A stretch of DNA of 41,582 bases from Octopus sinensis (taxonomy: Eukaryota): assembly GCF_006345805.1 (NCBI RefSeq), contig NW_021835286.1, positions 1 through 41,582 on the forward strand, read 5' to 3'. Positions within the stretch are counted from its first letter, which is position 1, and each line of letters opens with the position of its first letter. The notes beneath the pieces are model-generated. The model worked only from the letters and a program-made list of their open reading frames with translations, had not been told where the DNA came from and searched no databases. Both the position numbers and the translations under genes were made by a program. Positions 12,579-32,028 of the stretch are shown one piece after another.

Positions 12579-13144
12579 TTGGGTTGTCTGGAAAGTTTGT
12601 GCCGATTTATAGTAGCTTACATTTCGACTTATTTTAAAACATGGTTGAGTTCATAAAACAGAATTTGACTACACCTCCATTTAGAGAACAGTTTAAGCTA
12701 TCTTTTCAAGGAAGAAGGTTTATGTTCCTATAAACTGTGTTAATTTTGTGACCCTTCAAAATGGAAGATAAGAAAGTTCATTTCTGGCACTTGGTGCTTT
12801 GGGAACCAGACAAAAATTGCTGCAGCTTGGCTGGGATGTGTTACCCCACCCTCCATATTCACCAGATATTGCTCCTTCGGATTTCCACTTATTCAGGTCT
12901 CTGCAGAATAGTCTTAATGGTAAAAATTTCAATTCCTTGGATGACGTAAAATGATACCTTGATGAATTCTTTGCCATGAAACCACCTCAATTCTGGGAAG
13001 AGGGTATTTTCAAGTTAAAGGAAAGATAGAGACGCATTGTGCAACAAAATGGTTCATATTTGGTTGATTAAAAATGTAATAGGAAGTATTTATTGACCTT
13101 TTTCTTTCGTTTAAAAATCGGCACAAACTTTCCGGACAACCCAA
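12579..13144 (+). mobile_element. Internally deleted mariner element
   Basis: 30-bp TIRs (12579-12608 and 13115-13144, 1 mismatch) with flanking TA. The N-terminus MEDKKVHFWHLVLWE is fused to the C-terminus LGWDVLPHPPYSPDIAPSDFHLFRSLQN...NGSYLVD*. Confidence 0.92.
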
Positions 13145-13147
13145 TAT

Positions 13148-13522
13148 GTTTCTTTATCAGCCACACAGGGCTGCACACAGACGGGACAGATTACAAAGTA
13201 GAGCTTTGGCGGGGGAGGGGAGAAAAAAAAAGTTGGGTAGGTTTTCGATCAAAAGGGATTGTAAAAAGGGGGGAAAAAAAAACAATCAATAGGGATCGTG
13301 TATCACAGAAATGTCATGATGTAAATTGTAAAGGGGGAAGAATTTAGGTTTATCCGTGGAAAGAAAAGCCTACGGAAAAGACCACGGTAACCTCGGTCTA
13401 TAATGTCACATGTTAACACATTTGTTTGCAAGTAAGTAACCCTCTGTTTTAAAGTTTTCTGGGGTCATAGGATTATGCTCAAGGTGGCTTCGTCATTCAT
13501 AAGTGCCATCCATGCTACATTC
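13148..13522 (-). mobile_element. Second, shorter copy of the Tx1/L1-like LINE 3' end
   Basis: Aligns by eye with 11941-12375, e.g. the shared ggattatgctcaaggtggcttcgtcattcat and ggtttatccgtgg. Confidence 0.75.
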
Positions 13523-13619
13523 TATCTATGTATATCTATCTATCTATCTATCTATCTATCTAGATAGATAGATAGATAGATGTATCAAAGGAAATAAAAA
13601 ACAGAACACAAAGGATGTC

Positions 13620-13712
13620 ACGGTACACGTGTTTCGAGCTTTATAAAACAACTTATTCTTACATCAATGTATAATCGACATAACAGATAGTTCAAAAGCC
13701 CTCTTCAGCCGC
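13620..13712 (-). ncRNA. Type-I hammerhead ribozyme, canonical core
   Basis: Minus strand: GCGG-CTGAAGA-GGGCTTT...AAAGCTC-GAAA-CACGTGT-A-CCGT. It has stem I, a 7-bp stem II, a palindromic stem III (ACACGTGT) and a GUA cleavage triplet. Confidence 0.85.
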
Positions 13713-13922
13713 ATGCAATTACTACACCAAAGACTTGTATCACATTATGAAGAGTCTGAAAAAGAACATTTGGTATTATCTATAATGGTAGGTATATTGA
13801 ATTTCACTGAGAAAGTATGTTTGTAAATCATCATAATCAAATAGGTGTACAGGGTATTATTGGACTCCAAATATCCGTCCATACTGTATCATCACTCAGT
13901 ATAGACTGATAGATCCAATATC

Positions 13923-14011
<89 letters not shown>

Positions 14012-14310
14012 GGGTAGACAAAGATAGAAGAAAAACCGTAAGTTAAATAAATATTTGGATGTTTGGTCATAGGTGGACATGAAACGATTATAGCCTAGTA
14101 AAGCAATTTAAATGATAGCTTTATGTTTATTTAGCGTAACTGACATGCACAATACCATAATATACATATATGACAATAGGGGAAACAAAGGATATGAACT
14201 TGCTGGTATTTATTGACTGGCTTTTTAATGATTATTGGGTGGATGGTTAGAACATATATCAGTGTGTTGCAGTTTCACATTTGGTCAACATTATCGTTTG
14301 TATTTTATAT

Positions 14311-14926
14311 GGTTCAGACATTGGACTGTGGTCATGCTGGAGCGTAGTCTTGAAGGGTATTTTTAGTTCAATGAATCAAAGTCGGTACTTGTTTTATCAA
14401 TCTCAGTTGCTGAACTGCAAAGTTACATGGAAGTAAACAGACCAACAACAGTTGTCAAGTGGTTGGTTCAGACATTGGACTGTGGCCATGCTGGAGCATA
14501 GTCTTGAAGGGTATTTTTAGTCCAATGAATCGATGCCGGTTGTTGTTTTATCAATCTCAGTTGCTGAACTGCAAAGTTACGTGGAAGTAAACAGACCAAC
14601 AACGGTTGTCAAGTGGTTGGTTCAGACATTGGACTGTGGCCATGCTGGAGTATAGTCTGGAAAGGTATTTTTTAGTCCAACGAATCAATGCCGGTTCTTG
14701 TTTTATCAGTCGCCGTTGCTGAACTGCAAAGTTACATGGAAGTAAACAGACCAACAACAGTTGTCAAGTGGTTGGTTCAGACATTGGACTGTGGCCATGC
14801 TGGAGCATAGTCTGGAAAGGTATTTTTAGTCCAATGAATCAATGCCGGTTCTTGTTTTATCAGTCTCAGTTGCTGAACTGCAAAGTTACATGGAAGTAAA
14901 CAGACCAACAACGGTTGTCAAGTGGT
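14311..14926. repeat. Four tandem copies of a 154-155-bp SINE-derived unit
   Basis: ggttcagacattggactgtgg recurs at 14311, 14465, 14619 and 14774. Confidence 0.92.
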
Positions 14927-15067
14927 GATGTTAGTGGTGGTGGGGACAAACACAGACTCAGGGGCACACACATACATACACACAAACATGCATACACAAT
15001 CTCATACACACATGTAGACAGACAGATAGGCGGAAAGAAAGAAAAAAAGAAAGACAGAAAGACAGAA

Positions 15068-15359
15068 AGAAAGAAAGAGATAATAAAAAGCAGAAAAGTA
15101 TTAATTCCATATATAATCCACAATTTGATTGTACTCAACAGCTGTTTCACTGACAAACAACATTGATATTTATATAATCATGTAATTAAGATGCATAATG
15201 CTTTTTCTTGATGAATTGGTTACACATCTCTTTTAAATTAACATGCATGCAAATTTATTCCATCAATATTTATTACATTGTATTAATTGGTGTTTAACAA
15301 AGTAATTATGTATCTTAGTTGCATAATTATGTATCTTAATTACATGATTATATAAATAT
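15068..15359. repeat. Unclassified dispersed repeat; inverted copy at 26891-27168
   Basis: Long reverse-complement match, e.g. ctcaacagctgtttcactgac versus gtcagtgaaacagctgttgag. Confidence 0.8.
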
Positions 15360-16351
15360 GAACACACACGCACAGCACACACACACACAACATAAATACA
15401 ACACACAACATACACACACAATACACAAACACACACAACACACACAACAAACACACACAACACACAACACACGCATATATACACACAACACACGCATATA
15501 TACACACAACACACGCATATATACACACAACACACAGAGACAACACACACATACATGCACAAAATACACACACACATACACACATAACACACACAACATA
15601 CACACAGCACACACACATAACACACACACACACAATACACACACACACAACACACACACACCCAACACACACACAACACACACACACACATACACATGCA
15701 CACACACACTATTACATCTGAATTCACTGAGGTGATGCCTTTTGTAACTAAGGTCAAACCAGTGAACTATACTACCAAACCTGGCATCTGCATACTCTAA
15801 TATCAAAATTAGTCCAACATCACCACACACAACTCTCCCTCTCCTTTATAACTACCATTCCTTTCCCTCTTCCCATCATCTTCTACTCCTCCCCATCAAA
15901 TCCACACAGAACTGCCCACATACCCCCACATACCCCAATCAATCTTTGAACTGGTCAAAATTGATAAACGACTCTCACTTGTACATCCGCTCTTTCCAAC
16001 GCTAATGCCATATCATCTGAAGAAATGAATGCATGAATATGATCCACCCGATGTCCATAGATACTACAGACTGTGCTGTAATCATCCCAGGAATATGGCC
16101 TATGATCATAAGTAACACGTGATTTGTGGAAATGTGCGTAGTGTTTCATTAAATATTTATAAATTCCGTCCATGGATTATTATTGTTATTACTATATTTA
16201 TCCTACATTATATTGGCACAGCTTGGTTACAACCCCAAAAACTGGTATTGCCAGCTGGTATTATTAGGCTGTAGTTGGCATAATAAAATAGGAGCTTTTA
16301 TATGTATATTCAAAGACATTTCTCTAAACGAACTTAAATGGTATATTATAT

Positions 16352-16412
<61 letters not shown>

Positions 16413-16602
16413 TAATATTTATATATTATATAATTTTTCACTGTAGAGATTTATTTTCTGCAGAATTACTTCTGGTATTTTAGTGTTTCAAAACGAAGAC
16501 TTTTGAAAGATAACCCCCCAAGTGTAATGGGTAGAACTGTATGCATGTTTAATCTCTTGCAGACGTCTCGTGTATAGTTATGCAAATTATATTTGCAAAG
16601 AC

Positions 16603-16675
16603 AATCACACTGATGAGCTACAGACGATTACGTAAGTAATTACATCAGTGGTAATAGAGAAACTAGTGTGTGATT
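16603..16675 (+). ncRNA. Degenerate hammerhead (GUG triplet)
   Basis: AATCACA-CTGATGA-gCTA...TAGa-GAAA-CTAGT-G-TGTGATT. Stem I is a perfect 7 bp and stem III is the palindrome ACTAGT. Position 17 is G and the first stem II pair is mismatched. Confidence 0.62.
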
Positions 16676-16822
16676 AATCTATATTTTGTTTCTTTTCATT
16701 TGTCTTACTCGCTTACCTTCTGGTGTTTGCTAAATTTTTTTGAGAACATTCTTTTCTTAGTGGTAAGACCATAGCAGATCTACTTCTAGCATAATGGATG
16801 TCCACATAGTGGTCATCCCTCT

Positions 16823-16870
<48 letters not shown>

Positions 16871-16872
<2 letters not shown>

Positions 16873-18209
16873 CATCATCATCATCATCATCATCATTTAG
16901 CGTCCGCTTTCCATGCTAGCATGGGTTGGACGGTTCAACTGGGGTCTGTGAAGCTGGAAGGCTTCGTGAGGCCCAGTCAGATCTGGCAGTGTTTCTACGG
17001 CTGGATGCCCTTCCTAACGCCAACCACTCTGTGAGTGTAGTGGGTGCTTTTTACGTGCCACCCGCACAGGTGCCAGACAGGGCTGGCAAACGGCCACAAA
17101 CAGATGGTGCTTTTACGTGTCACCGGCACGGGGCCAGGCGATGCTGGCAACGGACATGAACGGATGGTGCTTTTACGTGCCACCGACACGGGGCCAGACA
17201 GGGCTGGCAAACGGCCACAAACGGATGGTGCTTTTACGTGTCACCGGCACGGGGCCAGGCGATGCTGGCAACAGACACGAACGGATGGTGCTTTTACGTG
17301 CCACCAACACGGGGCCAGACAGGGCTGGCAAACGGCCACAAACAGATGGTGCTTTTACATGTCACCACGGCACGGGGCCAGGCGATGCTGGCAACGGACA
17401 GGCGAACGGATGGTGCTTTTACGTGCCACCGACACGGGGCCAGACAGGGCTGGCAAACGCCAAACGGATGGTGCTTTTTACGTGTCACCGGCACGGGGCC
17501 AGGCGATGCTGGCAACGGACACGAACGGATGGTGCTTTTACGTGCCACCGACACGGGCAGACAGGGCTGGCAAACGCCAAAACGGATGGTGCTTTTACGT
17601 GTCACCGGCACGGGGCCAGGCGATGCTGGCAACAGACACGAATAGATGGTGCTTTTACGTGCCACCGACACGGGGCCAGACAGGGCTGCAGCAACGGCAC
17701 AAACAGATGGTGCTTTTACGTGTCACCGGCACGGGCCAGGCGAGGCTGGCAACGGACACGAACGGATGGTGCTTTTTACGTGCCACCGGCACGGGGCCAG
17801 GCGATGCTGGCAACAGACACGAACGGATGGTGCTTTTTACGTGCCACCGACACGGGGCCACAGGGCTGGCAAACGGCCACAAACGATGGTGCTTTTACGT
17901 GTCACCGGCACGGGGCCAGGCGAGGCTGGCAACAGACCAACGGATGGTGCTTTTACGTGTCACCGGCACGGGGCCAGCGATGCTGGCAACGGACACGAAT
18001 AGATGGTGCTTTTACGTGCCACCGACACGGGGCCAGACAGGGCTGGCAACGGCCACAAACAGATGGTGCTTTTACTGTCACCGGCACGGGGCCAGGCGAT
18101 GCTAGCAACGGACATGAACGGATGGTGCTTTTACGTGCCACCGACCGGGCCAGACAGGGCTGGCAAACGGCCACGAACGGACGGTGCTTTTACGTGTCAC
18201 ACCGGCACG
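16871..18209 (-). mobile_element. SINE family 3 (Meta-domain-like, (GAT)n tail) with expanded internal minisatellite
   Basis: Plus strand (cat)n-ttagcgtccgctttccatgctagcatgggttgg...ctggatgcccttcctaacgccaacc. Other copies lie at 3622-3880, 7700-8190, 21295-22120, 25561-25760 and 34660-35110. The domain name is from memory. Confidence 0.78.
17043..18209. repeat. About 60-bp minisatellite, roughly 19 subunits in alternating A/B order
   Basis: Recurrent atggtgcttttacgtg(t/c)cacc. The A subunit carries gccaggcgatgctggcaac and the B subunit gccagacagggctggcaaac. Confidence 0.9.
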
Positions 18210-18298
18210 TATATATTATATATACATACACACACATAATATACTGTTCTATGATAGAAAATTCAATAAAAAAAGTATTCCATCTGGTGTGAGACAAA

Positions 18299-18488
18299 TA
18301 TTATTTATTCAAAGGACACAATACATATAATGAAGCACTACTAATAGTTTCATATGTTGAGAAATATCTCAAACATATTCATCAGACGCAAACCACATAT
18401 CATCGCAAATATGTTTGTGATATTTCTCAACATATGAAACTATTAGTAGTGCTTCAATATATGTATTGTGTCCTTTGAATAAATAATA
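18299..18488. repeat. 81-bp inverted repeat, 28-bp spacer
   Basis: Arms 18299-18379 and 18408-18488, 2 mismatches by eye. Confidence 0.9.
18335..18389 (-). ncRNA. Type-I hammerhead ribozyme, canonical core
   Basis: Minus strand: GCGT-CTGATGA-ATATGTT-tgagatatttctc-AACATAT-GAAA-CTATTAGT-A-GTGC. Stem II is 7 bp, stem III is near-palindromic, the triplet is GUA, and stem I has two G-U pairs. Confidence 0.78.
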
Positions 18489-18747
18489 TATATATATATA
18501 TATCAGCTAAAACCTGACACTAAAACCACATTAAATGTTCATACAGCACCACTGAACATTTAATGTGGTTTTAGAGTCGAGTTTTGGCTGCTATTTCCAG
18601 CATGGTGGTATCTCTTAGATACCCTAAACTATAATTTTAAATAATTATTACCTTTGAAGGATTTTATTCCCATGCTGGCCACTTGATAAGATTGATATTT
18701 AAATAACGATCATATCCTTATTTACATAAATTTATATATGAACGATG

Positions 18748-18832
<85 letters not shown>

Positions 18833-18834
18833 TA

Positions 18835-18870
<36 letters not shown>

Positions 18871-19541
18871 TATATGCACGCACACACATACATACACACA
18901 CATGCATGCACACACACACACACAACTGAGTAAAGAGCAGAAATGAATAAATGATGCCTAATTTAATAGTTCTCCATTTCCCTCCATCTTTTCTTAATTT
19001 GTATCAGATTTAACTCGTTAACAATATTTTGATTTCTATTTTCCAAGTTTTCCTCCCAATCAAATGAGTAATTCATCACATTTAGCGATTTAATTCATTA
19101 TGTACGCTAATTACGTAATTATATAAATGTCGATTTCTTTTCCTTCTTTACTCCTCTCGAAACAGCTGTCAAGAACAATTGAATTATTAATCTTATGTAC
19201 AATTCACGCCTTTCTGCTATATACTGTTCTAAATGTATGGCTGTCAACTGTTGCTTTAGCTGTGTTTGTATATAAATGCAACTTTATTCAATCAATATTT
19301 ATTGCATTGTAATACTGTATTGGAGTTTAACGGTGTGGAAATAACTGGAGATTTAAATACCACAGATATATTTTATGATGTCTATGCATTGACTTTGTAA
19401 ATATACACTTTTTACCCTTTGTCGCTTACTTGCTTCAGTCGTTGAAGCATTGTAGCCATATGGTAAGAAGTTTGGTATGGGTGGAGAGCTGGCAGAAACG
19501 TTAGCACGCCGGGTGAAATGCTTAGCAGTATTTCTTCTGCT

Positions 19542-19787
19542 GGAGGTGTGTGGCTTAGTGGTTAGGATGTCAGCATCATGATTGTAAGATTGTGGTTTCA
19601 ATTCCTGGACCAGGCAATGCGTTGTGTTCTTGAGCAAAACACTTCATTTCACGTTGCTCCAGTCCACTCAGCTGGCAAAAATAAGTAACGCTACGATGGA
19701 CCGGCGTCCCGTGCAGCTGGGTAACATATACGCCATAGAAACCAGGAAACTGGGCCCATAAGCCTGGCTAGGCTTTAAAAGGGTGCA
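19542..19787 (+). mobile_element. tRNA-derived SINE, family 4
   Basis: A-box tggcttagtgg and B-box-like ggtttcaattcc, followed by gttcttgagcaaaacactt. It sits between two family 1 heads. Confidence 0.65.
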
Positions 19788-19790
19788 AAT

Positions 19791-20020
19791 GCGGTGAGCT
19801 GGCTGAATCGTTAGCACATCGGGTGAAATGCTTAGCGGTATTTCATCTGTTTCTACGTTCTGAGTTCAAATTCCACCGAGGTCGACTTTGCCTTTCATCC
19901 TTTCGGGGTTGATGAAATAAGTACCAGTTACGCACTGGGGTCGATGTAATCGACTTAATCCCTTTGTCTGTCCTTGTTTATCCCCTCTATTTTTAGCCCC
20001 TTGTGGGTAGTAAAGAAATA
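19791..20020 (+). mobile_element. tRNA-derived SINE, family 1 (Deu/Nin-like central domain), full length
   Basis: A-box-like tggctgaatcg and B-box gagttcaaattcc, then gcctttcatcctttcggggttgatgaaataagtacc and an A-rich tail. Further copies lie at 6301-6520(-), 35134-35363(-), 19481-19540(+), 27865-27965(-), 29961-30082(+) and 30985-31075(-). The domain name is from memory. Confidence 0.82.
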
Positions 20021-20239
20021 AGAAGCTTGCTTTCCAACCATATATATATATTGTTATATTTCGGAATGGTCATATTGCCAGTTTAGCCAATAAAAAATCT
20101 TGCACAACAAATATTTAAACGTACATATATATAAATATATATATATATATAGGAAGAATTCACACGAAAAGAACAAAAAACAAATTCAGGTGGTGTAGAC
20201 ATCAGATGTATTAGTTTAACGCTTGAGAAGTGAAAAAGT

Positions 20240-20276
20240 CTTTAACGTTTCGAGCCTATGCTCTTCAACAGAAAAG
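20240..20276 (-). ncRNA. Minimal hammerhead remnant
   Basis: Minus strand: cTTTt-CTGTTGA-A-GAGC-atag-GCTC-GAAA-CGT-T-AAAG. A6 is changed to U. Confidence 0.55.
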
Positions 20277-20389
20277 AACACAGAAAGAAACAAGGAGAGA
20301 AAATACAGAATGTGTAGTGGCTAACACACACATATGAGGGCATTCTGAGAAGCTCCTTGTTTTGGCTAAAAGAAAATATAGGATCTGTT

Positions 20390-20547
20390 AATTATGATTT
20401 TATTCAACATATACCTCTCAGATTCACACACATACTGTATCGATCCCTCAGTTTTTCTGAACCCTGTAAAAGGACTCTGAAGATTGGACGTCCATTCAGG
20501 CCTTTCACGATACCCCTAAAGCCAGGAACTTTTCAGTACCCCATTGT
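20390..20547 (-). mobile_element. Mariner-derived MITE fragment
   Basis: TIR-like end aaagccaggaacttttcagtacccc, shared with 6092-6122 (aaagccaggaacttttcagcatcccctcg). Its internal sequence resembles a mariner ORF end. Confidence 0.45.
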
Positions 20548-20569
20548 ATATGTATTAGGTCTCTTTTAC

Positions 20570-20761
20570 TCTTTTACTTGTTTCAGTCATTTGACTGTGG
20601 CCATGCTGAAGCACCGCCTTATTTTTTGTAAGCCCAGTACTTATTCTATCACTCCCTGTTGCCGAACTGCTAAGTTACGGGGACGTAAACACACCAGCAT
20701 CACTTGTCAAGCGATGTTGGGGACAAACTCAGACACACAAATATACACACACACACATGCG

Positions 20762-20793
<32 letters not shown>

Positions 20794-21010
20794 CACACAC
20801 ACACACACGCACACACACACACACACACACATATACATATACATATATACGACGGGCTTCTTTCAGTTTCTGTCTACCAAATCCACTCACAAGACTTTGG
20901 TCGGCCTGAGGCTATAGTAGAAGACACTTGCCCAAGGTGCCACGCAGTGGGGTTGAATCTGGAACCACGTGGTTCATAAGCAAGCTACTTACCACACAGC
21001 CACTCCTACA
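20570..21010 (-). mobile_element. SINE family 2, near full length with internal (CA)n
   Basis: Both halves are present, separated by the microsatellite. Confidence 0.78.
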
Positions 21011-22220
21011 TCTGTTATATATATATATCTTTATATATATATACTATGGGCTTCGTTCAGTTTCCGTCTACCAAATCCACTCACGAGGCTTTGGTCAGCC
21101 CGAGGCTATAGTAGAAGACACTTGGCCAAGGTGCCACGCAGTGGGATTGAACCCAGGACCATGTGGTTGGTAAGCAATCTATTTACCACACAGCCACTCC
21201 TGCACCTATTTGTTATCTGATGAGATGTTAGAGTATCGATCTGCAAATAGTGATGCAGAAGTCATCCAGCAAGGAAATAATGTGAATGGAGATATCATCA
21301 TCATCATCATCATTTAGCGTCCATTTTCCATGCTAGCATGGGTTGGACGGTTCAACTGGGGTCTGGGGAGCCCGAAGGCTGCACCAGGCCAGTCAGATCT
21401 GGCAGTGTTTCTACAGCTGGATGCCCTTCCTAACGCCAACCACTCCGAGAGTGTAGTGGGTGATTTTATGTGCCACCGACACAGGTGCCAGACGAGGCTG
21501 GCGAACGGCCACGCTCGGATGGTGTTTTTATGTGCCACCGACACAGGTGCCAGACGAGGCTGGCAGACGGCCACGCTCGGATGGTGTTTTTATGTGCCAC
21601 CGACACAGGTGCCAGATGAGGCTGGCGGACAGCCACGATCGGATGGTGTTTGTTACGTCCCCAAAGCACGGAGGCCAGTCTATGCGGTACTGGCTACGGC
21701 CACGTTCGGATGATTTTTCTTGTGTGCCACCGGCACTGGTACCACCGGCACTGGTACCACAAGATACAAATTCCATTGATGTTCATCTATTTTGATTTGT
21801 TTTGATTTGATTTGATTTTCACTTGCCTCAACAGGTCTTCACAAGTGTCACAAGAAGGAAGGTATGCACAGGTGGACTGACTACGTCCCAGGTAGGGGCC
21901 ACGGGTTATGGCCTGACTAGTCTTGCCGGGTCTTCGGATGGTGTTTTTATGTGCCACCGACACAGGTGCCAGATGAGGCTGGCGAACGGCCACGATCGGA
22001 TGGTGTTTGTTGCGTGCCCACAGCACGGAGGCCAGTCGATGCGGTACTGGCTACGGCCACGTTCGGATGGTTTTCTTGTGTGCCACCGGCACTGGTACCA
22101 CAAAGATACAAATTCCATTGATATATATATATATATATTATATATATATATATATATTGATAAAACGGTAAGATAACAAAAGAAAGAAAGAGACCTCAAT
22201 ATTATGTAAATAGAGGAAAT

Positions 22221-22602
22221 TATCTATACAATATGTTACATTACTCGGTAGTCAAGATAAAACTCTGAGTTTCAGATGCCGAAGTGGAAATCCACAACAC
22301 CATCTCTTCGGTTATCTGGCTATTTGAAAACGTTATGAAAAAATACCGTTAAAAATGAAGGGAAATTACTCTGTTATAATTCTGCTTTGCTGCGTACTTA
22401 TACATCGCTCGCATTTTTCGTCATAAAATTATATAAAATACATAAAAATATATAAAAATATATAAAAATATATAAAATCTTCTTGGGACATAACACAGAA
22501 AGCATGTTCTATCCGTTTTCTTTAGGGGACCAAAAACGTAACAGAAATTTAGTCACATGTGGGCATGATCCGAAAAGCTCTGTCCTTGTATTTAGACATG
22601 TG
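22221..22602 (-). repeat. Inverted pseudo-LTR copy (left arm)
   Basis: Near-identical reverse complement of 24468-24842; differences are concentrated in the AT-rich TATAAAAA repeats. Confidence 0.93.
22249..22322 (-). ncRNA. Second copy of the hammerhead-like variant (inverted pseudo-LTR)
   Basis: Exact reverse complement of the motif at 24741-24814. Confidence 0.6.
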
Positions 22603-22790
22603 TAAGAGTTGTGTGTATTTGCTGTTATCTACCAGGTATAAGTTCTTGGTTTTATCCGAAAAAAGTGCTTTTTTCTTGGAGCTTTTTATATGATCAATAT
22701 CTTTTTTCAATTTATGTTGGAAATTGTTAAAAGACTTACGAAACTTTATTTTGCTCATGATCTTCAGCAGGTCCGCTTCGAAATCTTCCA
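22599..22790 (-). pseudogene. Inverted upstream fragment of the same PLE ORF
   Basis: Minus strand reads LEDFEADLLKIMSKIKFRKSFNNFQHKLKKDIDHIKSSKKKALFSDKTKNLYLVDNSKYTQLLH. Its last 46 nt (22599-22644) are the exact reverse complement of 22791-22836, where the plus-strand ORF begins. Confidence 0.85.
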
Positions 22791-23105
22791 AACTTATACC
22801 TGGTAGATAACAGCAAATACACACAACTCTTACACAACAGCATCATTAATAATTATACTAAGGCTAGGGCACAGACATATAACGAAATTAATAAAGAAGC
22901 TAGTGTCATCGCCGCTAAACTTAAATTAGATAAAAAATAGAAAACCCCCCCAAAAAGAGGCCTTTATTACTATTAAAGACCACAAAGAAAACTTCCTTTC
23001 CAACCCTAAATGTAGGCTTATCAACCCACCAAGTCAGAACTAGGGATTATTAGCAAAGAAATTTTAGATAAAATAAATACGAAAATTAAGACCGATACTA
23101 GGCTA

Positions 23106-24065
23106 GTGCAATGGTCCAACAGTATAGAAGTCGTAGACTGGTTTAAAGCTATTAAGAATAAGAAAAAAGCGAGGTTTACACAATTTGATATTGTTGATTT
23201 TTATGCCTCTATCTCTAAAGAACTGCTAGATAAAGCCCTAATCTTCGCTAGTGACTTCATAGAAATTAGTACCAATGATAAGGATATAATCTTCCATGCT
23301 AGAAAGACATTACTTTTCAGTGAGAATGCAAAGTGGGTAAAAAACACCGACACGGAGGGCGCTTTCGATGTGAGCATGGGTTCATATGATGGGGCAGGCA
23401 TCTGTGATCTAATTGGACTCTTTCTCCTAGATACCTTCGGTAAGACATTCCCTAACGTACATTTCGCCATCTACAAAGATGATGCCCTCGCCTTAACAGC
23501 TAATACAAATGGACCAGCACAAGATCGTTTTAGGAAGGATATTATCCAGTTAATGAAACACTTCGGACTTAGTATAACTATAGACACTAACCTGACGGTT
23601 GTCAATTTCTTAGACGTTTCCTTAGATCTTAATAATAATATTTATAAGCCTTATAGGAAGCCCAATGATAGACTAAGTTATATTAATGTAGGTTCATGCC
23701 ATCCCCCTATAGTATTCAAAAATTTAGTTAAAAATATTAGTAAGAGGATTTCTAGCCTCTCATCTAATGAGGACATCTTCAATAGCGTTGCCCCAGTTTA
23801 TAATAAAGCTTTAAAAGATAGTGGTTTTAGCGAAAAAATAAAATATACACCTATCACCAGCCCAACAATAAGGAAAAGGAATAATAGAAATAGGAAGGTC
23901 ATCTGGTTTACGCCCCCTTACTCACCCGAGGTGGCCTTCAATATAGGTAAATATTTCCTAGCACTGATAGATAGACATTTTCCAGTTAACCATGCTTATA
24001 GGAAACTCTTCAATAGACACAATTTAAAAATAGTTTTAGTTCAACTACCAATTTTAAAAACATAA
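23106..24065 (+). pseudogene. PLE reverse transcriptase core and thumb (the reading frame extends upstream to about 22791 across frameshifts)
   Basis: Motifs FTQFDIVDFYASI (A), SMGSYDGAGICDLIG (B), AIYKDDALAL (C), NFLDVSLDL, YRKPNDRLSYINVGSCHPP and RKVIWFTPPYS. The upstream frameshifted segment reads NLYLVDNSKYTQLLH...EAFITIKDHKENFLSNPKCRLINP. Confidence 0.9.
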
Positions 24066-24102
24066 TCAATCATAACATACAAAAAACACAAGAAGAAACA
24101 GC

Positions 24103-24561
24103 TGTTCATGCAGGAATAAAGAATTGTGCCCGCTAAATGGAGCTTGCATGTCCAAGACCATCATATATGAAGCTACCGTAAACTCTATAACCACTAAAGA
24201 CACCGTTTCGACGAAGAAATACGTGGGCCTGACAGAGGGTAATTTCAAGGCCAGGTTCAATAACCACACTTTGAGCTTTAGGCACTGGAACAAAAGAAAA
24301 GCGACACAATTATCCAATCATATTTGGTCTTTAAGAGATAAAGGTGTCGATTATAACATACAATGGAAGATTTTGGCCAAATGTAAGCCCTATACCAACG
24401 GCAGCGGAAGGTGCGGTTTATGCGACATGGAGAGATGGCTTATCTGGAAAAGCAGCTTAGACCCTACCACATGTCTAAATACAAGGACAGAGCTTTTCGG
24501 ATCATGCCCACATGTGACTAAATTTCTGTTACGTTTTTGGTCCCCTAAAGAAAACGGATAG
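24103..24561 (+). pseudogene. PLE GIY-YIG endonuclease domain with Cys-rich linker
   Basis: CSCRNKELCPLNGAC linker, IIYEATV...YVGLTEGNFKARFNNH (GIY-YIG-like), CGLCDMERWLI and a terminal SCPH. It is separated from the RT frame by small indels near 24030-24100. Confidence 0.88.
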
Positions 24562-24837
24562 AACATGCTTTCTGTGTTATGTCCCAAGAAGATTTTATAT
24601 ATTTTTATATATTTTTATGTATTTTTATATAATTTTTATGACGAAAAATGCGAGCGATGTATAAGTACGCAGGCAAAGCAGAATTATAACAGAGTAATTT
24701 CCCTTCATTTTTAACGGTATTTTTTCATAACGTTTTCAAATAGCCAGATAACCGAAGAGATGGTGTTGTGGATTTCCACTTCGGCATCTGAAACTCAGAG
24801 TTTTATCTTGACTACCGAGTAATGTAACATATTGTAT

Positions 24838-24842
<5 letters not shown>
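24468..24842 (+). repeat. PLE 3' pseudo-LTR (right arm)
   Basis: Contains the ORF C-terminus, the 3' UTR and a hammerhead-like motif; mirrored at 22221-22602. Confidence 0.93.
24741..24814 (+). ncRNA. Hammerhead-like variant in the PLE pseudo-LTR
   Basis: AGATAA-CCGAAGA-GATG...CATC-T-GAAA-CTCAGAGT-T-TTATCT. Stem I is 6 bp and stem III is ACTC/GAGT. It has C at position 4, an extra U before GAAA, and a GUU triplet. Confidence 0.6.
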
Positions 24843-24925
<83 letters not shown>

Positions 24926-25119
24926 TGAGAGAGAAAATGTTAATGGTATAAAACATCAAAATTTATATTCATAGGCTTTGAGATTTCAGTTAAACAAACA
25001 TGTTGATAAATTCCAAAAATGTCATTACAATGCAGTGAATTGCTGGGGAAACAGAATTGCATCCGTATACAGAATTGGTTAGGAAGGATACTGGAAGCGA
25101 CATATTTAGAATGAAAAGC

Positions 25120-25369
25120 TGAAAAACATCATCATTATCAACATCATCATCTCTATCATCATCATCATTGTCATCGTCATCGTTATCATCATCATCATCA
25201 TCATCATTATCATCATCATCATAATCATCATCATCGTCATCATCATCATCATTATTATCATCATCATCATAATCATCATCATCATCATTATTATCATCAT
25301 CATCATAATCATCATCATCGTCATCATCATCATCGTCATCGTCATCATCATCATCATCATCGTCGTCGC

Positions 25370-25400
<31 letters not shown>

Positions 25401-25401
25401 G

Positions 25402-25433
<32 letters not shown>

Positions 25434-25485
25434 TTCGTCATCATCATCATCATCACTGTCATCATTATCATCATCATCATCTTCG

Positions 25486-25562
<77 letters not shown>

Positions 25563-25570
25563 GTGATCAT
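25120..25570. repeat. (CAT)n microsatellite
   Basis: Directly visible. Confidence 0.95.
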
Positions 25571-26311
25571 CATTTAACATCTGCTTTCTATGCTGGCATG
25601 AATTGGATGGTTCTGACATGGTCTGAGATGGTTAGCAGGGAGCTGTCCAGACCCCCAGCTGTCCATTGAGGCACAGTTTCGAGGTTTCGATGGCTGGATG
25701 TCCTTCTTAATGCCAACCACTTCACAGAGTGTGTCGGGTGCTTTTTACCCTCCACCAGCACAGTTCTTTATGTTTGCAAAGTCCCCTGTAGTGAAAACCC
25801 AAGTATCACCGCCATGTAACATAGCTGTACATACACAGGCATCATGCAATCTGCCTTTCACTCTGAGGGAGAGGCCTTTACTTACCAACAAAGCCAGAAG
25901 CTCTCTGAACTTTGCCCAGCCCATTCTTATCCTAGCAACAACACTTTCAGAACTCCCTTCTCCCCTGCTAAGTTGGCCCCTAGGTAACAGAAGCTATCTA
26001 CTACTTCTAATGATCGACCCGAGCATTTGAGGGAGCCTATCGTCTGCTTATTTTTAGTGCCACACATAAAGACTATACTATCTACTCATTTACTTGTTTC
26101 AGTCATTTGACTGTGGCCATGCTGGAGCACCGCCTTTAGTCGAGCAAATTGACCCCAGGACTTATTCTTTGTAAGCCTAGTACTTATTCTATTGGTTTCT
26201 TTTGCCGGACCGCTAAGTTACAGGGACGTAAACACACCAGCATTGGTTGTCAAGCGATGTTGAGGGGACAAACACGGACCCACAAACATATACACACACA
26301 TACATACATAC

Positions 26312-26354
<43 letters not shown>

Positions 26355-26437
26355 CATCATCGTTTAACGTCCGCTTTCCATGCTAGCATGGGTTGGACGA
26401 TTTTGACTGAGGGCTGGCGAGCTAGATGGCTGCACCA

Positions 26438-26468
<31 letters not shown>

Positions 26469-26554
26469 CATCATCATCGTTTAACGTCCGCTTTCCATGC
26501 TAGCATGGGTTGGACGATTTTGACTGAGGGCTGGCGAGCTAGATGGCTGCACCA

Positions 26555-26585
<31 letters not shown>

Positions 26586-27217
26586 TATATATATACACAT
26601 ATAAGTACACATATATATACACATATATACATACATATATATATAACAGGCTTCTTTCAGTTTCCGTCTACCAAATCCACTCACAAGGCTTTGGTCGGCC
26701 CGAGGCTATAGCAGAAGACACTTACCCGAGATGCCACTCAGTGGGACTGAACCCAGAACCATGTGATTGGTAAGCAAGCTACTTACCACACAGCCACTCC
26801 TAGGCCTATCTGTTAACCTTTCTTTGATAACACTGCACAAATTTCACATATTTTTCAATGGCGGCTTCATTGGCAATAAACATCATTTTTATATAATTAA
26901 GATACATAGTTATGCAATTAAGATACATAATTACTTTGTTAAACTCCAATTAATACAATGTAATAGTTATTGATGGAATAAATTTGCATGCATGTTAATT
27001 TAAAAGGGATGTGTAACCAATTCACTGAGAAAAAGCATTATGCATCTTAATTACATGATTATATAAATATCGATGTTGATTGTCAGTGAAACAGCTGTTG
27101 AGCACAATCAAATTGTAGGTTATGTATGAAATTCATACTTTTCTGCTTTTTATTATCTCTTTCTTTCTCTCCGTTTGTTTGTCTGTCTTTCTCCCTGTAT
27201 ACATACATACATACATA

Positions 27218-27260
<43 letters not shown>

Positions 27261-27462
27261 CAATATCAAAGGGTAATCTGAAATATTAAAAATTTCCATT
27301 ACCAGTGGCCTAGCATGTAAAAAATTTAGTCAATAGCCTATATATTATTCATATAAATACAGTGTACATTTAAACACAAAAGAGGCATCCATCATAGTAC
27401 TACCTGCTCGCTAGAGAGGACAGTTAAATTCCAAAACCACTTTTGTGTTTAAATGTACACTG

Positions 27463-27501
<39 letters not shown>

Positions 27502-28712
27502 ATATATATATATGTACATATATATGTATGTATGTATTATGTATGTATGTAGAAGGTTGAAAAGCAACACGCAAGTTGATATATATGGAAAAACAAGTCA
27601 AGGTAGAAAATGCTAAAATAATTTTATAAAGAACATTTCAGTACCGGTTTCAGTAATTGAGACTTTTTCAGCTGTAAGTATGGAAAATAATTAAATTTTG
27701 GAATAGTTAAGAAAATTTTTTTTAAAAGCATATTTGCATAGTGTTCAAATACAAGGGGCATTTTCCTTGTTTCTGCCTGTCTCTGTGTCTCTTGTTTACT
27801 CTTGTGGGTTCTTCGTGAGCCTTGAGTGTATTCTCTCTCTCTCCCTCTCTCTCTCTTCCTCTCTTTCTTATTTCTTTATTGCCCATAAGGGGCTAAACAT
27901 AGAGGGGACAAACAAGGACACAGAAAGGGATTAAGTCGGTTACATCAACCCCAGTGCGTAACAGTGCGGTGTTGGGGACAAATACAGAAAGCACAAACAC
28001 AAACACACACACACACACACACACACACCACACACACACACACATATATACATACATTTTTTTTTTTAGTTTCTGCTCACAAGCTGTGGCCATGCTGGGG
28101 CACCGCCATACATGATGGGATTCTTTCAGTTTCCGTCTACCAAATCCACTCACAAGGCTTTGGTTGGCCTGAGGCTATAGTAGAAGACACTTGCTCAAGG
28201 TGCCATGCAGGGGGACTGAACCCAGAACCATGCGGCTGGGAAGAAAGCTTCTTATAACACAGCCTGGCCTGCAACACACACACACACACACACACAAACA
28301 CACATAATGGGCTTCTTACAGATTCCGTCTACCAAATACACTGCTCAATGCTACAGCAGAAACCACTTGCCCAAGGTACCTCACAGTGGGACTGAACCCA
28401 GAACCGTGTGGTTGGGAAGCTTATCTTGCTATTGATAGAATGTACTCTTCTATTTCCAATGTTATGTTCTATATCTCAGTTGTGCCCTACATCAGGCTGC
28501 GCAGTGTGTAATTACTATAGAATATTCTACCTATAAGATCGAAAGAGAGAGACACAGAGAGAAGGAGAGAGAGAGAGAGAAAGAGAGAGCTATTTTTCTG
28601 TTTGTATGTGAGAAATACAAAGGAAAAAAGTGATGTATGTACATATGTGTGTATATATATATATATATATCTTTCAGCAGAAGTTACAGAGTGACTGGAG
28701 TCCTACTTTCCT

Positions 28713-28751
<39 letters not shown>

Positions 28752-29954
28752 ATTATGCACAAATATATATACACACACACACAATTATATACAAATATAT
28801 ATATATACACACACACAATTATGTACATATATATATATACACACACAATTATGTACAAATATATATATATATTTGTATATATATATATATATATGTGTGT
28901 GTGTATGTATGTATTTCATTCTCGTTTTATATCAGTCTGAATAATCTTTGTCTTTCCCACCAGCTGTATGTAGACGATTAGCTTGTTAGAAATAACAGCC
29001 AGATCGTCAAATCACACACAACTACACGCCGCCATTTTAAACACACACATATATATATATGTATCTGTATATATTTATATCCCATACACAAAACCCTCCC
29101 TAAAAATAACGAAATCTATTTGATCATAGGTTTGTTTTTCGATCAGAGACGACCTTGGGTTAAATAACAATAATATTTCTGCAGAAAATATCGTCCATTG
29201 CAATATTGCAAAGCAAGATAACAAGAACACTAGACGCCATTAATTTCCTTTACAAATTTATCAATTTTTCTCATCTTTTCCTTCACACGCTGCCGGCTGC
29301 TTTTCTCTTTATTCCTTGACAGTAAATTATGATTGTATTTTACTATATTTCACATGTTCTATAAAGTTTATTCAATTATTTAGCTTAAAAAACGACTTCA
29401 AATAACCTTTTTTTAAATTTATTTTTTCTAAACCTCCTCCCGATCGCCGTGTTTTCTATATTTTGTGTTGCTTCTAACGATCGTTTTCAAGTTTATTAAT
29501 ATTTATTATATTAATAATTTTCACAAATGGCTCCTGATATATTATAATATTGATCTTCGTGTTTTAATATATCTGCATCGATATTCATATTTTTTTATGC
29601 TTTGTTGATTGTTCAGATATATAATTTTTTTACTTGCTTTTTTTTTTACTTGATGATGTAAATGTTCTTGTTGTTGTTGTTGTTAATTATTTTACTGTGG
29701 TTTTTGTTGTTGTTGCTTTTGTTGTTTTGTCGCTGTTGCTGTCGTATTTGCTTTTATTGTTTTTATTTTAGCTGTTTTTTCTAATTTTCAAAATTTGCTG
29801 TTGTTGTTTAGCCCCAAGCAAGCCACATCCTAATCCAGCAGACCTGAAACGAATCATTTCCTGGATTCTTAGCCAGGAATTAAAAACCTTAATCTACATT
29901 TTTTTGCAAGCTTCTTTCCATTGTTCACAGTATTAGCACTTAGAAATTTATGAG

Positions 29955-30084
29955 AGGCGGTCCTTTCGGGGTCGATAAATTAAGTACCAGCTACGTACTG
30001 GGTCGATGTAATCGACTTAATCCCTTTGTCTGTCCTTGTTTTTCCCCTCTATGTTTAGCCCCTTGTGGGTAATAACGAAATAAA
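29955..30084 (+). mobile_element. 5'-truncated SINE family 1 copy with 11-bp TSD
   Basis: aaatttatgag occurs at both 29944-29954 and 30085-30095. Confidence 0.72.
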
Positions 30085-30107
30085 AAATTTATGAGCGGGA
30101 ACTGCCA

Positions 30108-30529
30108 GGATCTTTTCGGTTTGAACGGCAGTTTTTAAAAATAATTTCCACGTAACTAAACACTTTTAAACTTCGTATACTGGTAGAATGTGTTTATAAA
30201 ACATTTTTTTCTCTTGGCTTTATTGAGAAAATTCTATAGTTTGTAAGATATTTGTTCTTTCTTTTCTTCAATTTCTGCAATTTCAACCAATCACTAACGT
30301 CCATTGAGGTAAAAAAAAACACATTCTGTGCCGTATGAATATGTCCCTCGTTTAAGAAACAGATTGGGCTTATTTACATTTCTGAAGCAAAAAAAGATAC
30401 CCTTCCCCACCCCTAACCCTAACCCTAAAACAGATTGAAATGCAATAGATCGATTCTAAGGTCATAATTATGGGTGACAATTTCATATGACACCGCTAGA
30501 AAAAACTGCCATTCAAACCGAAATGAGCC
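30108..30529. mobile_element. Non-autonomous TIR element (MITE)
   Basis: About 29-bp imperfect TIRs: ggatcttttcggtttgaacggcagttttt and aaaaactgccattcaaaccgaaatgagcc. It contains (CCCTAA)3 at 30411-30428. No clear TSD. Confidence 0.7.
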
Positions 30530-30844
30530 AAGGTTTATTCTTTTACCAGAATGTCTTAGGTTAAATTTAGTTCAATGCAAATCTGTTGTGTCTGGGGAGA
30601 GCCATTTTCTTTTTTTGTGTCTTATAATGTAACACACTCACCGGTAAAATTTCCACTTTTTTCTTATTTTTATTTTGCTAAAATTTTCGTTGCGTCTTGC
30701 AAATTTTTCAATAGTCTACAGACACAACAGATTATGCTTCAACACACGAACTCATATAAAGAATTTTGCAAACCAAATCCCAAAACGCAAATAAACTAAT
30801 TCACCTTCTTTTGTATCCCAACCTACTTACAGGTTTCGAACATG

Positions 30845-30975
30845 TATAAATATCTTCTCCATCAAGATACCTTAACTGATCCAGCCAGTCGTTGGGGTGC
30901 CACTCTAGATGCTGTCATTGCGTCTCTTCTCTGTCATGCATAGCAGGTTCACTCCATTGTGACCTGTCCACTTCT
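30845..30975 (-). mobile_element. Highly decayed RTE-like LINE C-terminal remnant
   Basis: Minus-strand fragments KWTGHNG and LEWHP resemble the RTE W-GH...EW-P motif; the frames are broken. Confidence 0.3.
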
Positions 30976-31440
30976 TAATGTTTATTTCTTTATTGCCCAC
31001 AGGGGGTTAAACATAGCGGGGGGAGGGGGCAAACAAGGACAGACAAAGGAATTAAGTCGCTTACATCGACCCAATTGAGAAGCAAGCTTCTTTTATTCAT
31101 TAGATTGGCCATAAAGGCCTTACAAAGACAGGAAGCTGCGGGCTGGACACGGACATAACGAGAGGGAATGATAAACGATATGATAATAATGAGGGCAACA
31201 GCAATGCCCGCTGATTGCTGTTTACCTGAGCACATTGTTCTTTATAAGTACCATATTTGAGGCAACAAACCTCTTACACAGTTCAAAGTAAAACACGAAG
31301 GAGGCGATAAACCTCTTACATTTACAACAAGAAAGCCATTATGAGGCAATAAACCTCTTACACAAGTCAATTATAAAATCAATGAAATAATACAACTGAG
31401 GCACCCAGCCTCTTACTTTAAGTAGTTACAAATCAACCAA

Positions 31441-31485
<45 letters not shown>

Positions 31486-31486
<1 letters not shown>

Positions 31487-31998: not shown

Positions 31999-32028
<30 letters not shown>

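What the first reader, a model, noticed from the sequence alone, without database searches (positions are those of the whole stretch)
13620..13712. Intact canonical hammerhead in the sense strand of the host gene's intron
Seen: every core position is canonical (CUGAAGA, GAAA, G10.1-C11.1, GUA), with an unusually long 52-nt loop II. It lies on the same strand as the three-finger gene, inside the intron between the two exons. Its stem III (ACACGTGT) is identical to that of the 36501 motif, although the rest differs. Inference: it could cut nascent pre-mRNA, or pair with another molecule through the palindrome, making cleavage depend on transcript concentration.
Basis: partly seen in the sequence, partly recalled or inferred. 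Interest (0 to 1): 0.72.

Follow-up and report, generated by a model that had tools for sequence, protein, structure and literature searches.

The report
Retroelement hammerhead relic in octopus intron
The sequence is a real, intact-looking type I hammerhead ribozyme in the sense strand of a 27-kb intron of an octopus Ly6-like gene, but it looks like the ribozyme module of an old retroelement insertion that drifts neutrally, not a host gene switch.

Summary
On the minus strand, 13713->13619 reads helix I (5 bp), CUGAAGA, G10.1-C11.1 helix II (7 bp plus a 52-nt imperfect hairpin insert), GAAA, ACACGUGU, A17, with cleavage predicted between 13624 and 13623. My descriptor finds only this motif and the 36.5-kb motif in the window, and none in 400 shuffles. 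Rfam does not call either.

The intron claim is confirmed. An Octopus vulgaris Ly6/QVR-like protein maps exon 1 to 33655-33736 and exon 2 to 6672-6842, both on the minus strand. The hammerhead therefore sits in intron 1, in sense.

The functional inference is weak:
- The hammerhead lies in a 342-bp element between (TAGA)n arrays.
- The orthologous O. vulgaris copy carries C11.1->U, a broken helix III palindrome and a helix I mismatch.
- The 36.5-kb motif cannot form helix I in trans with it, and it lies upstream of exon 1.
- Homodimer Kd estimates are about 10^4 times above single-transcript concentrations.

The 36.5-kb element and a nearby RT/GIY-YIG (Penelope-like) element are lineage-specific insertions at (TA)n. 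The best reading is the ribozyme module of a Penelope-like or retrozyme-type non-autonomous retroelement. It is a new member of a known kind and of low to moderate interest.

The parts
13619..13713 (-). Complete type I hammerhead motif (helix I outer pair to outer pair); predicted cleavage between 13624 (A17) and 13623 (C1.1)
   Evidence: Direct reading; descriptor hit; 0 hits in 400 shuffles
13702..13708 (-). Core box C3-A9 (CUGAAGA)
13636..13701 (-). Helix II arm: 7-bp base (GGGCUUU/AAAGCUC, G10.1-C11.1) plus a 52-nt insert that folds into an imperfect hairpin with a 10-bp tip
   Evidence: Fold; 0 substitutions and 1 indel against O. vulgaris over 64 aligned nt
13625..13635 (-). G12A13A14 plus the helix III palindrome ACACGUGU (A15.1 to U16.1)
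   Evidence: same helix III type as the Rfam Hammerhead_1 consensus
13582..13922 (-). Solitary ~340-bp AT-rich element (counted as 13583-13924, 342 bp, 33% GC, in the script) that carries the hammerhead 41 nt from its 3' end. It is present at the orthologous O. vulgaris site (L032 24444-24785, 93% identity).
13521..13581 (.). Flanking microsatellite, (TCTA)n then (TAGA)5
   Evidence: TRF
13923..14011 (.). Flanking microsatellite (TAGA)22
   Evidence: TRF
33655..33736 (-). Coding part of exon 1 of the Ly6/QVR-like host gene (signal peptide MMATTPSFVLLHLVLLFILLLLLTIHP + G; donor CAG|GTAAGT; phase 1)
   Evidence: Exon scan, sequence, match to O. vulgaris protein P0129
6672..6842 (-). Exon 2 of the host gene (first half of the three-finger domain), 100% identical in protein to O. 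vulgaris CAI9744003.1. Exon 3 lies outside the window.
6843..33654 (-). Intron 1 (26.8 kb), which contains the hammerhead in sense orientation
   Evidence: Derived from the exon mapping; collinear with the O. vulgaris gene
36509..36582 (-). Second hammerhead (CUGAAGA, 9-bp helix II with one mismatch, GAAA, ACACGUGU, A17). It lies about 2.8 kb upstream of exon 1.
36442..36925 (.). ~484-bp insertion carrying the second hammerhead. The minus-strand copy is 36672->36442. A 5'-truncated inverted copy is 36673-36925 (arms 98% identical). It lies between (AT)n arrays and is absent from the orthologous O. vulgaris (TA)n site.

Best explanation
The motif is the self-cleaving module of a short, non-autonomous retroelement of the Penelope-like-element (PLE) or non-LTR-retrozyme kind. 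A roughly 340-bp copy landed in a (TAGA)n microsatellite inside intron 1 of an octopus Ly6/QVR-like gene, before this species split from O. vulgaris.

In active source elements, such type I hammerheads are thought to cut multimeric or read-through element transcripts. Two copies pair through the palindromic helix III, and each provides helix I to the other (a double hammerhead). This releases unit-length RNA with 5'-OH and 2',3'-cyclic phosphate ends, which a PLE reverse transcriptase/GIY-YIG endonuclease can copy into microsatellite targets (inferred from the literature).

This particular copy is a solitary relic. Its core is intact by descent and by luck, not by selection. It is co-transcribed with the host pre-mRNA (shown for position and strand; transcription is inferred). 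It is expected to cleave poorly or not at all there, because helix III is only 2 bp in cis and no compatible partner lies in the same transcript.
For: 1. Real hammerhead, beyond chance.
2. The architecture matches the metazoan type I / PLE 'min-HHR' described by Cervera & de la Pena 2014 (PMC4209133): long helix II (7-9 bp), short helix I (5 bp), G10.1-C11.1 and a palindromic helix III. The Rfam Hammerhead_1 consensus has the same loop-less 8-nt helix III.
3. It sits in a discrete ~340-bp AT-rich unit bounded by microsatellite on both sides, 41 nt from the unit's 3' end.
4. The sister motif at 36.5 kb shares the exact 14-mer TCGAAACACGTGTA. It sits in a ~484-bp insertion at (TA)n with an inverted 5'-truncated partner, and it is absent from the O. 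vulgaris orthologous site. That is the insertion structure and target bias described for PLEs (PMC8557442).
5. An RT + GIY-YIG element at 22.2-24.8 kb, with its own inverted 3' copy, is also a lineage-specific insertion at the edge of a (TA)n array. PLE-type machinery was therefore recently active in this lineage.
6. Neutral decay: the O. vulgaris ortholog has C11.1->U, helix III G->A, G2.2->U and U1.4->C. That is 4 substitutions in the 30 core and helix I/III positions; the whole element differs at 22 of 341 positions.
7. No compatible partner exists: helix I of the 36.5-kb motif does not match in trans, and the 18.4-kb motif has a different helix III.
Against: - No sequence similarity outside the hammerhead links the 13.6-kb element to the 36.5-kb element or to the RT/GIY-YIG element in the window.
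- That RT element, and three relatives from other animals, show no canonical hammerhead.
- No tandem array is present, which is the hallmark of retrozymes.
- The extra unpaired nucleotide between A9 and G10.1, typical of PLE min-HHRs, is absent.
- No further family copies could be retrieved, so helix covariation is untested.
- The 64-nt helix II arm has no substitution between the two species, where about 4 would be expected at the element-wide rate. This is unexplained.
- All disabling changes lie on the O. vulgaris side. Without an outgroup, lineage-specific retention in the window species cannot be excluded.
Confidence: 0.75

Rival explanations
1. Domesticated intronic ribozyme. The hammerhead cleaves the nascent pre-mRNA of the Ly6/QVR-like gene in cis or as a dimer, and so tunes its expression, like the conserved intronic hammerheads of amniotes.
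For: Sense orientation inside intron 1. Every core position is intact in the window species. The helix II arm is unchanged between the two species. The homodimer cofold minimum is a double hammerhead. There is precedent in amniote introns (PMC6155905).
Against: The O. vulgaris ortholog carries changes at C11.1, in helix III and in helix I. The amniote examples, by contrast, are conserved in the introns of all amniotes analysed. Helix III in cis is only 2 bp (+1.4 kcal/mol). The dimer Kd estimate is about 10^4-fold above single-transcript concentration. The dimerisation energy is no better than that of shuffled sequences (39 of 100). PLE min-HHRs cleave poorly even as dimers in vitro.
Confidence: 0.06
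2. A hammerhead-bearing mobile element of another kind, not mobilised by PLEs. Examples would be a circRNA-type retrozyme copied by a different reverse transcriptase, or a foldback/MITE-like DNA element that happens to carry the motif.
For: There is no homology to the resident RT/GIY-YIG element. That element family shows no canonical hammerhead. The 18.4-kb hammerhead-like motif sits in a 192-bp whole-length palindrome next to (TA)n, which looks like a MITE.
Against: In the 36.5-kb insertion the inverted arms are not terminal: the plus-strand copy runs 143 nt beyond its arm. This fits 5'-truncated head-to-head retro-insertions and not a TIR element. The literature ties animal type I hammerheads and retrozymes to PLEs.
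Confidence: 0.15
3. A chance match to the hammerhead consensus in AT-rich, repeat-rich DNA.
For: Rfam gives no hit. A loose CUGANGA...GAAA...UH pattern is at chance level in the window (11 matches observed, 11 expected).
Against: The full descriptor gives 0 hits in 400 shuffles, against 2 real loci that share an exact 14-mer.
Confidence: 0.01

Closest known systems
Metazoan type I hammerhead (Rfam RF00163 Hammerhead_1; Schistosoma and newt satellite type)
   Same: Same core, same strand order (helix I open), G10.1-C11.1, and the same loop-less 8-nt palindromic helix III. The Rfam consensus is ACGcgCGU; this motif has ACACGUGU.
   Different: Helix II is a 66-nt arm instead of 4 bp plus a 6-nt loop. 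There is no recognisable loop 1/loop 2 tertiary contact. The motif scores below every Rfam threshold.
Minimal hammerheads of Penelope-like elements (Cervera & de la Pena 2014, PMC4209133)
   Same: Long helix II, short helix I, conserved G10.1-C11.1 and palindromic 15.x-16.x. Copies occur as dispersed single motifs and as inverted pairs 100-700 bp apart. A dimeric mode of action is expected.
   Different: There is no unpaired nucleotide between A9 and G10.1. Helix II carries a much longer insert. No RT ORF or pLTR is attached to this copy.
Animal non-LTR retrozymes (Cervera & de la Pena 2020, PMC7229834; Li et al. 2026 preprint, doi 10.64898/2026.07.22.740005)
   Same: Unit size (~340 bp), low GC (33%), one type I hammerhead per unit and no coding capacity. 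Monomeric dispersed copies are known, and about 43% of Xenopus copies lie in introns.
   Different: There is no tandem array here. circRNA expression is untested.
Conserved intronic hammerheads of amniotes (RECK, CTCL, DTNB; de la Pena & Garcia-Robles 2010, as summarised in PMC6155905)
   Same: Type I hammerhead of retroelement ancestry, in the sense strand of an intron.
   Different: Those hammerheads are conserved across amniotes. This one already differs at essential positions between two Octopus species.

Membership tests
Hammerhead ribozyme, type I | Conserved core C3U4G5A6N7G8A9 / G12A13A14 / A15.1-U16.1 / H17, in type I order | tested here: met
   Direct reading and descriptor scan
Hammerhead ribozyme, type I | Three helices around the core, with G10.1-C11.1 | tested here: met
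   Helix I is 5 bp and helix II is 7 bp plus an extension. Helix III is only 2 bp plus a tetraloop in cis, or 8 bp in trans.
Hammerhead ribozyme, type I | Score at or above the Rfam RF00163 gathering threshold | tested here: not met
   No Hammerhead match at gathering or at E<=10. The positive control L024 scores 36 bits against a threshold of 34. The long helix II insert is the likely cause.
Hammerhead ribozyme, type I | Mg2+-dependent self-cleavage 3' of H17 | not testable with these tools
   Needs in vitro transcription or end-specific RNA-seq
PLE minimal hammerhead | Long helix II (6-8 bp), short helix I (4-5 bp), palindromic 15.2-16.2 / loop 3 | tested here: met
   7 bp, 5 bp and ACACGUGU, compared with PMC4209133
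PLE minimal hammerhead | Unpaired nucleotide between A9 and G10.1 | tested here: not met
   G10.1 follows A9 directly in both window motifs (bulge = 0)
PLE minimal hammerhead | Location in the pLTR or 3' region of an element encoding RT + GIY-YIG | tested here: inconclusive
   The motif lies 41 nt from the 3' end of a short non-coding unit. The RT/GIY-YIG element in the window shares no sequence with it and has only a hammerhead-like relic.
PLE minimal hammerhead | Genome-wide consensus families with compensatory changes in the helices | not testable with these tools
   No octopus genome collection can be searched by DNA here. The metagenome scan gave only chance matches.
Non-LTR retrozyme | Head-to-tail tandem repeats of 170-400 bp, each with one type I hammerhead | tested here: not met
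   Single copy; no second unit in the window or in the 53-kb O. vulgaris locus
Non-LTR retrozyme | Low GC, non-coding unit of a few hundred bp | tested here: met
   342 bp, 33% GC
Non-LTR retrozyme | Expression as linear and circular RNA | not testable with these tools
   No transcriptome access
Domesticated intronic hammerhead (amniote RECK/CTCL type) | Sense orientation in an intron of a protein-coding gene | tested here: met
   Intron 1 of the Ly6/QVR-like gene
Domesticated intronic hammerhead (amniote RECK/CTCL type) | Conservation of the ribozyme at the orthologous site across species | tested here: not met
   The O. vulgaris ortholog has C11.1->U, helix III G->A and G2.2->U

The most novel reading that the evidence does not exclude
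In the window species, the still-intact hammerhead is active on the pre-mRNA of a Ly6/QVR-like gene. It would act either as a monomer helped by its unusually long helix II arm, which is unchanged between the two species, or with abundant family transcripts. That would give a young, lineage-specific case of ribozyme-mediated control of a gene from a family related to quiver/sleepless. It would be an early stage of the domestication seen in amniote introns.
Probability: 0.05. Interest if true: 0.6.

Novelty: new member of a known kind. Interest (0 to 1): 0.25.

Why it matters
It adds a cephalopod example, with an unusually long helix II arm, to the type I hammerheads carried by Penelope-like and retrozyme-type retroelements. 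Rfam misses this variant.

It also shows, with an orthologous comparison, that a 'perfect' hammerhead in the sense strand of an intron can be a neutral transposon relic. That is a useful caution for genome scans that read function from an intact core.

The neighbouring lineage-specific insertions suggest that such elements were recently mobile in Octopus. This could be followed up genome-wide.

Tried and rejected
- Rfam at gathering and at E<=10 over both motifs gave no hammerhead, only microsatellite-driven miRNA noise.
- The pattern CTGANGAG-N40-70-CGAAACACGTGTH was scanned in JGI metagenome contigs and IMG/VR. It gave 27 and 1 matches, essentially all chance hits in coding-like DNA. Two contigs (L009, L024) happen to carry compact hammerheads with the same helix III, but none is a relative of the long-helix-II form.
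- I looked for a hammerhead in the window's RT/GIY-YIG element and in three related loci from other animals, using relaxed descriptors. No canonical motif was found, so a direct link between this hammerhead family and that element could not be shown.
- The word-index protein search and the PDB search with the exon 2 peptide found nothing. Only the exhaustive HMMER search recovered the gene family.
- A literature search for the literal sequence strings was uninformative.
- Dimerisation free energy as evidence was rejected. The homodimer ddG of -9.3 kcal/mol is matched by 39 of 100 shuffles.
- Circular permutation between the 13.6-kb and 36.5-kb elements (a shared TGTTCTGTTTTT-like stretch downstream in one and upstream in the other) was considered. 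It rests on one 20-nt, 90% match with E = 0.48 and is not significant.
- An exact empty site for the 18.4-kb palindromic element could not be defined, because the region differs structurally between the two species.

Full report
**What is there**

On the minus strand the window reads, from 13713 down to 13619: UGCGG (helix I, 5' strand); CUGAAGA (C3-A9); GGGCUUU; 52 nt; AAAGCUC (helix II, with G10.1-C11.1); GAA-A; CACGUGU (helix III, A15.1 to U16.1); A17; CCGUG (helix I, 3' strand).

The 52 nt are not an open loop. The minimum-energy fold extends helix II into an imperfect hairpin of 7+4+1+10 bp.

ACACGUGU has no loop. In cis it can form only A-U and C-G around an ACGU tetraloop (+1.4 kcal/mol). 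Between two molecules it forms an 8-bp helix (-10.3 kcal/mol).

**Is it more than chance?**

A loose CUGANGA...GAAA...UH pattern is at chance level in the window: 11 matches observed and 11 expected.

A full descriptor is not. It requires the core, G10.1-C11.1, helix II of at least 4 bp, a palindromic or hairpin helix III, H17 and helix I of at least 3 bp. It finds only two loci in the window, 13624-13708 (-) and 36509-36582 (-). It finds none in 400 dinucleotide-preserving shuffles.

CGAAACACGTGT occurs exactly three times: in each of the two motifs and in an inverted partial copy at 36700 (+). The two motifs share an exact 14-mer.

Rfam reports no hammerhead, either at gathering thresholds or at E<=10. 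As a control, the same tool calls Hammerhead_1 (36 bits, threshold 34) on a compact motif with the identical helix III in metagenome contig L024. The Rfam consensus itself draws helix III as a loop-less 8-nt palindrome. The window motif is therefore a Hammerhead_1-type core whose helix II carries a long insert that the model penalises.

**The host gene**

- **Exon 2:** 6672-6842 (-) has a clean acceptor and donor, both in phase 1. It encodes EALLCSQCTSDKTPDCESNPPPATNC.... The word-index and PDB searches found nothing. The exhaustive HMMER search found a family of 130-150-aa proteins with a borderline Pfam QVR (quiver, u-PAR/Ly-6-like) match.
- **O. vulgaris match:** One cluster member is an Octopus vulgaris protein, CAI9744003.1, 156 aa. 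Its residues 28-84 are 100% identical to exon 2.
- **Exon 1:** The signal peptide of that protein matches, with two substitutions, an ATG exon at 33655-33736 (-). I had found this exon independently as the only candidate with a perfect phase-1 donor, CAG|GTAAGT.
- **Exon 3:** It is not in the window.
- **Intron 1:** It is therefore 6843-33654 (26.8 kb), and the hammerhead lies in it in sense orientation.
- **The gene product:** It is a GPI-anchored Ly6-type three-finger protein, not a toxin.
- **The 36.5-kb motif:** It lies about 2.8 kb upstream of exon 1, outside this intron.

**Comparison with the O. vulgaris locus**

The O. vulgaris locus (L032, OX597842.1:25227773-25280870) is collinear with the reverse of the window at 85-97% identity. 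The window therefore comes from a closely related Octopus species.

The ~340-bp unit that carries the hammerhead is bounded by (TAGA)5 at 13561-13581 and (TAGA)22 at 13923-14011. It is present at the orthologous place in O. vulgaris at 93% identity, so the insertion predates the split.

Within the hammerhead, the O. vulgaris copy differs as follows:
- C11.1->U
- G->A inside helix III (ACACAUGU, palindrome lost)
- G2.2->U (a helix I mismatch)
- U1.4->C
- a 1-nt deletion in the U run of helix II

That is 4 substitutions in the 30 core and helix I/III positions, and none in the 64-nt helix II arm. The whole unit differs at 22 of 341 positions. Most of the core changes are at CpG sites. This is the pattern of neutral decay, not of a conserved ribozyme. 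The silence of the helix II arm is unexplained: about 4 changes would be expected there at the element-wide rate.

**Evidence that it is a mobile element**

- **The 36.5-kb insertion:** The second hammerhead sits in a ~484-bp insertion, 36442-36925, between two (AT)n arrays. The minus-strand copy (36672->36442) carries the whole ribozyme. It abuts a 5'-truncated inverted copy (36673-36925) whose arm is 98% identical. The orthologous O. vulgaris site has an uninterrupted (TA)n tract, so this insertion is lineage-specific.
- **The RT/GIY-YIG element:** An element with an RT-like ORF and a GIY-YIG ORF lies at 22.2-24.8 kb, again with an inverted copy of its own 3' end. Its relatives are about 50% identical in Holothuria, Hydra and others. 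It belongs to a 3.5-kb block that is absent from O. vulgaris and sits at the edge of a (TA)n(GA)n array.
- **What the literature says:** Inverted 5'-truncated partners and microsatellite targets are the published hallmarks of Penelope-like elements (PMC8557442). Type I hammerheads with long helix II, short helix I and palindromic helix III are the published 'min-HHRs' of PLEs. These occur mostly as dispersed single motifs or as inverted pairs, and they cleave poorly in vitro even as dimers (PMC4209133). Animal retrozymes are now argued to be non-autonomous PLE derivatives, and about 43% of Xenopus copies lie in introns.

**Limits of that attribution**

Outside the hammerhead, the 13.6-kb unit shares nothing with the 36.5-kb unit or with the RT element. 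The RT element, and three relatives fetched from other animals, show no canonical hammerhead. I saw only a hammerhead-like relic in the RT element's 3' UTR. There is no tandem array. Pattern scans of metagenome and viral contigs returned only chance matches, so family-level covariation could not be tested.

**Mechanism in this copy**

Two copies of the 13.6-kb motif cofold, without constraints, into a double hammerhead with an intermolecular helix III and both helices I formed in trans. However, the energy gain of -9.3 kcal/mol is matched by 39 of 100 shuffles, so it is not evidence in itself.

The monomeric hammerhead fold is 3.4 kcal/mol above the monomer minimum. In that minimum, the upstream UGCAUG pairs with the palindrome.

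A heterodimer with the 36.5-kb motif can form helix III, but not helix I in trans (GGCGU against GAAUG, and CUUCU against CCGUG). It cannot build an active site.

Rough Kd values of 5e-8 to 3e-7 M compare with about 3-17 pM for one molecule per nucleus. Dimer-dependent cleavage of this pre-mRNA is therefore unlikely, unless abundant family transcripts with a matching helix I exist.

From general knowledge, not tested here: slow intronic ribozymes need not disturb splicing, whereas fast ones can. Any effect would depend on a cleavage rate that this architecture does not promise.

**Verdict**

The interpretation as a host regulatory device is not supported.

The best explanation (about 0.75) is a solitary, old copy of a hammerhead-bearing non-autonomous retroelement of the PLE/retrozyme kind, evolving neutrally inside the intron.

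It is a new member of a known kind. Hammerhead_1 matches have already been counted in a cephalopod genome (PMC6962438). The long helix II arm is a variant that standard models miss.

Noticed in passing
window 36442-36925: ~484-bp hammerhead-bearing insertion with a head-to-head 5'-truncated partner (arms 36442-36548 and 36673-36782, 98% identical), between (AT)n arrays. The orthologous O. vulgaris site is an uninterrupted (TA)n tract, so this is a lineage-specific and probably recent insertion.
   Followed up: yes
window 18339-18385 (-), inside 18298-18489: Third hammerhead-like motif: CUGAUGA, A10.1-U11.1, 7-bp helix II, GAAA, near-palindromic ACUAUUAGU, A17 and a weak 4-bp helix I. It lies in a 192-bp whole-length palindrome next to (TA)n, 41 nt from the element's end. 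It was not found in the 53-kb O. vulgaris locus. It could be a second hammerhead family or a MITE-like coincidence.
   Followed up: partly
window 22225-24838 (+), within the block ~21296-24838: Penelope-like element: an RT-like ORF (23016-24062) and a GIY-YIG ORF (24076-24558), separated by a stop, with an inverted copy of its 3' end at 22225-22700. The whole 3.5-kb block is absent from O. vulgaris and sits at the edge of a (TA)n(GA)n array. Relatives are about 50% identical in sea cucumbers and Hydra.
   Followed up: partly
window 24746-24808 (+) and its inverted copy 22255-22317: Hammerhead-like relic in the 3' UTR of that element: AGAUAA / CCGAAGA / GAUG...CAUC-U / GAAA / CUCAGAGU / U / UUAUCU. 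It has a 6-bp helix I and a near-palindromic helix III, but C at position 4 and an extra U before G12. H17 lies 36 nt from the element's 3' end, similar to the 41 nt in the 13.6-kb and 18.4-kb units. Significance not assessed.
   Followed up: partly
window 13637-13701 against L032: The helix II arm of the hammerhead has no substitution between the two Octopus species (0 of 64, one 1-nt indel). The 30 core and helix I/III positions have 4, and the rest of the unit about 8%. This may reflect CpG-driven change in the core plus chance. It is unexplained.
   Followed up: partly
window 40788-41042 (-) and 41115-41219 (+): Inverted duplicate ORF fragments encoding CGQATCCKDPYCYNY, which resembles the C-terminal CC..D.C.N end of Ly6/three-finger domains. 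This may be an exon of another Ly6-like gene, or a repeat.
   Followed up: no
window 41261 (+); L032 3468 (-): GAAACACATGTA, preceded about 30 nt upstream by CTGATGT. It is conserved in both species and may be a decayed hammerhead copy (A9->U and a broken palindrome).
   Followed up: no
window 37247-38943: G-rich tandem array with a period of about 176 bp (9 or more copies, 68-98% identical), followed by GAT/GGT trinucleotide-rich DNA up to about 39.6 kb.
   Followed up: no
window 32416-33330: Tandem array with a 20-bp period (40 or more copies), a few hundred bases downstream of exon 1, at the start of intron 1.
   Followed up: no
window 12799-12954 (+): Mariner-type transposase fragment (...PYSPDIAPSDFHLFRSLQNSL...). 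SINE-like repeats recur at about 12000-12330 and 13100-13470.
   Followed up: no
L009 591-626 (-) and L024 4270-4314 (+): Two metagenome contigs, found by chance, carry compact canonical type I hammerheads with the same ACACGUGU helix III. L024 passes the Rfam Hammerhead_1 threshold.
   Followed up: partly
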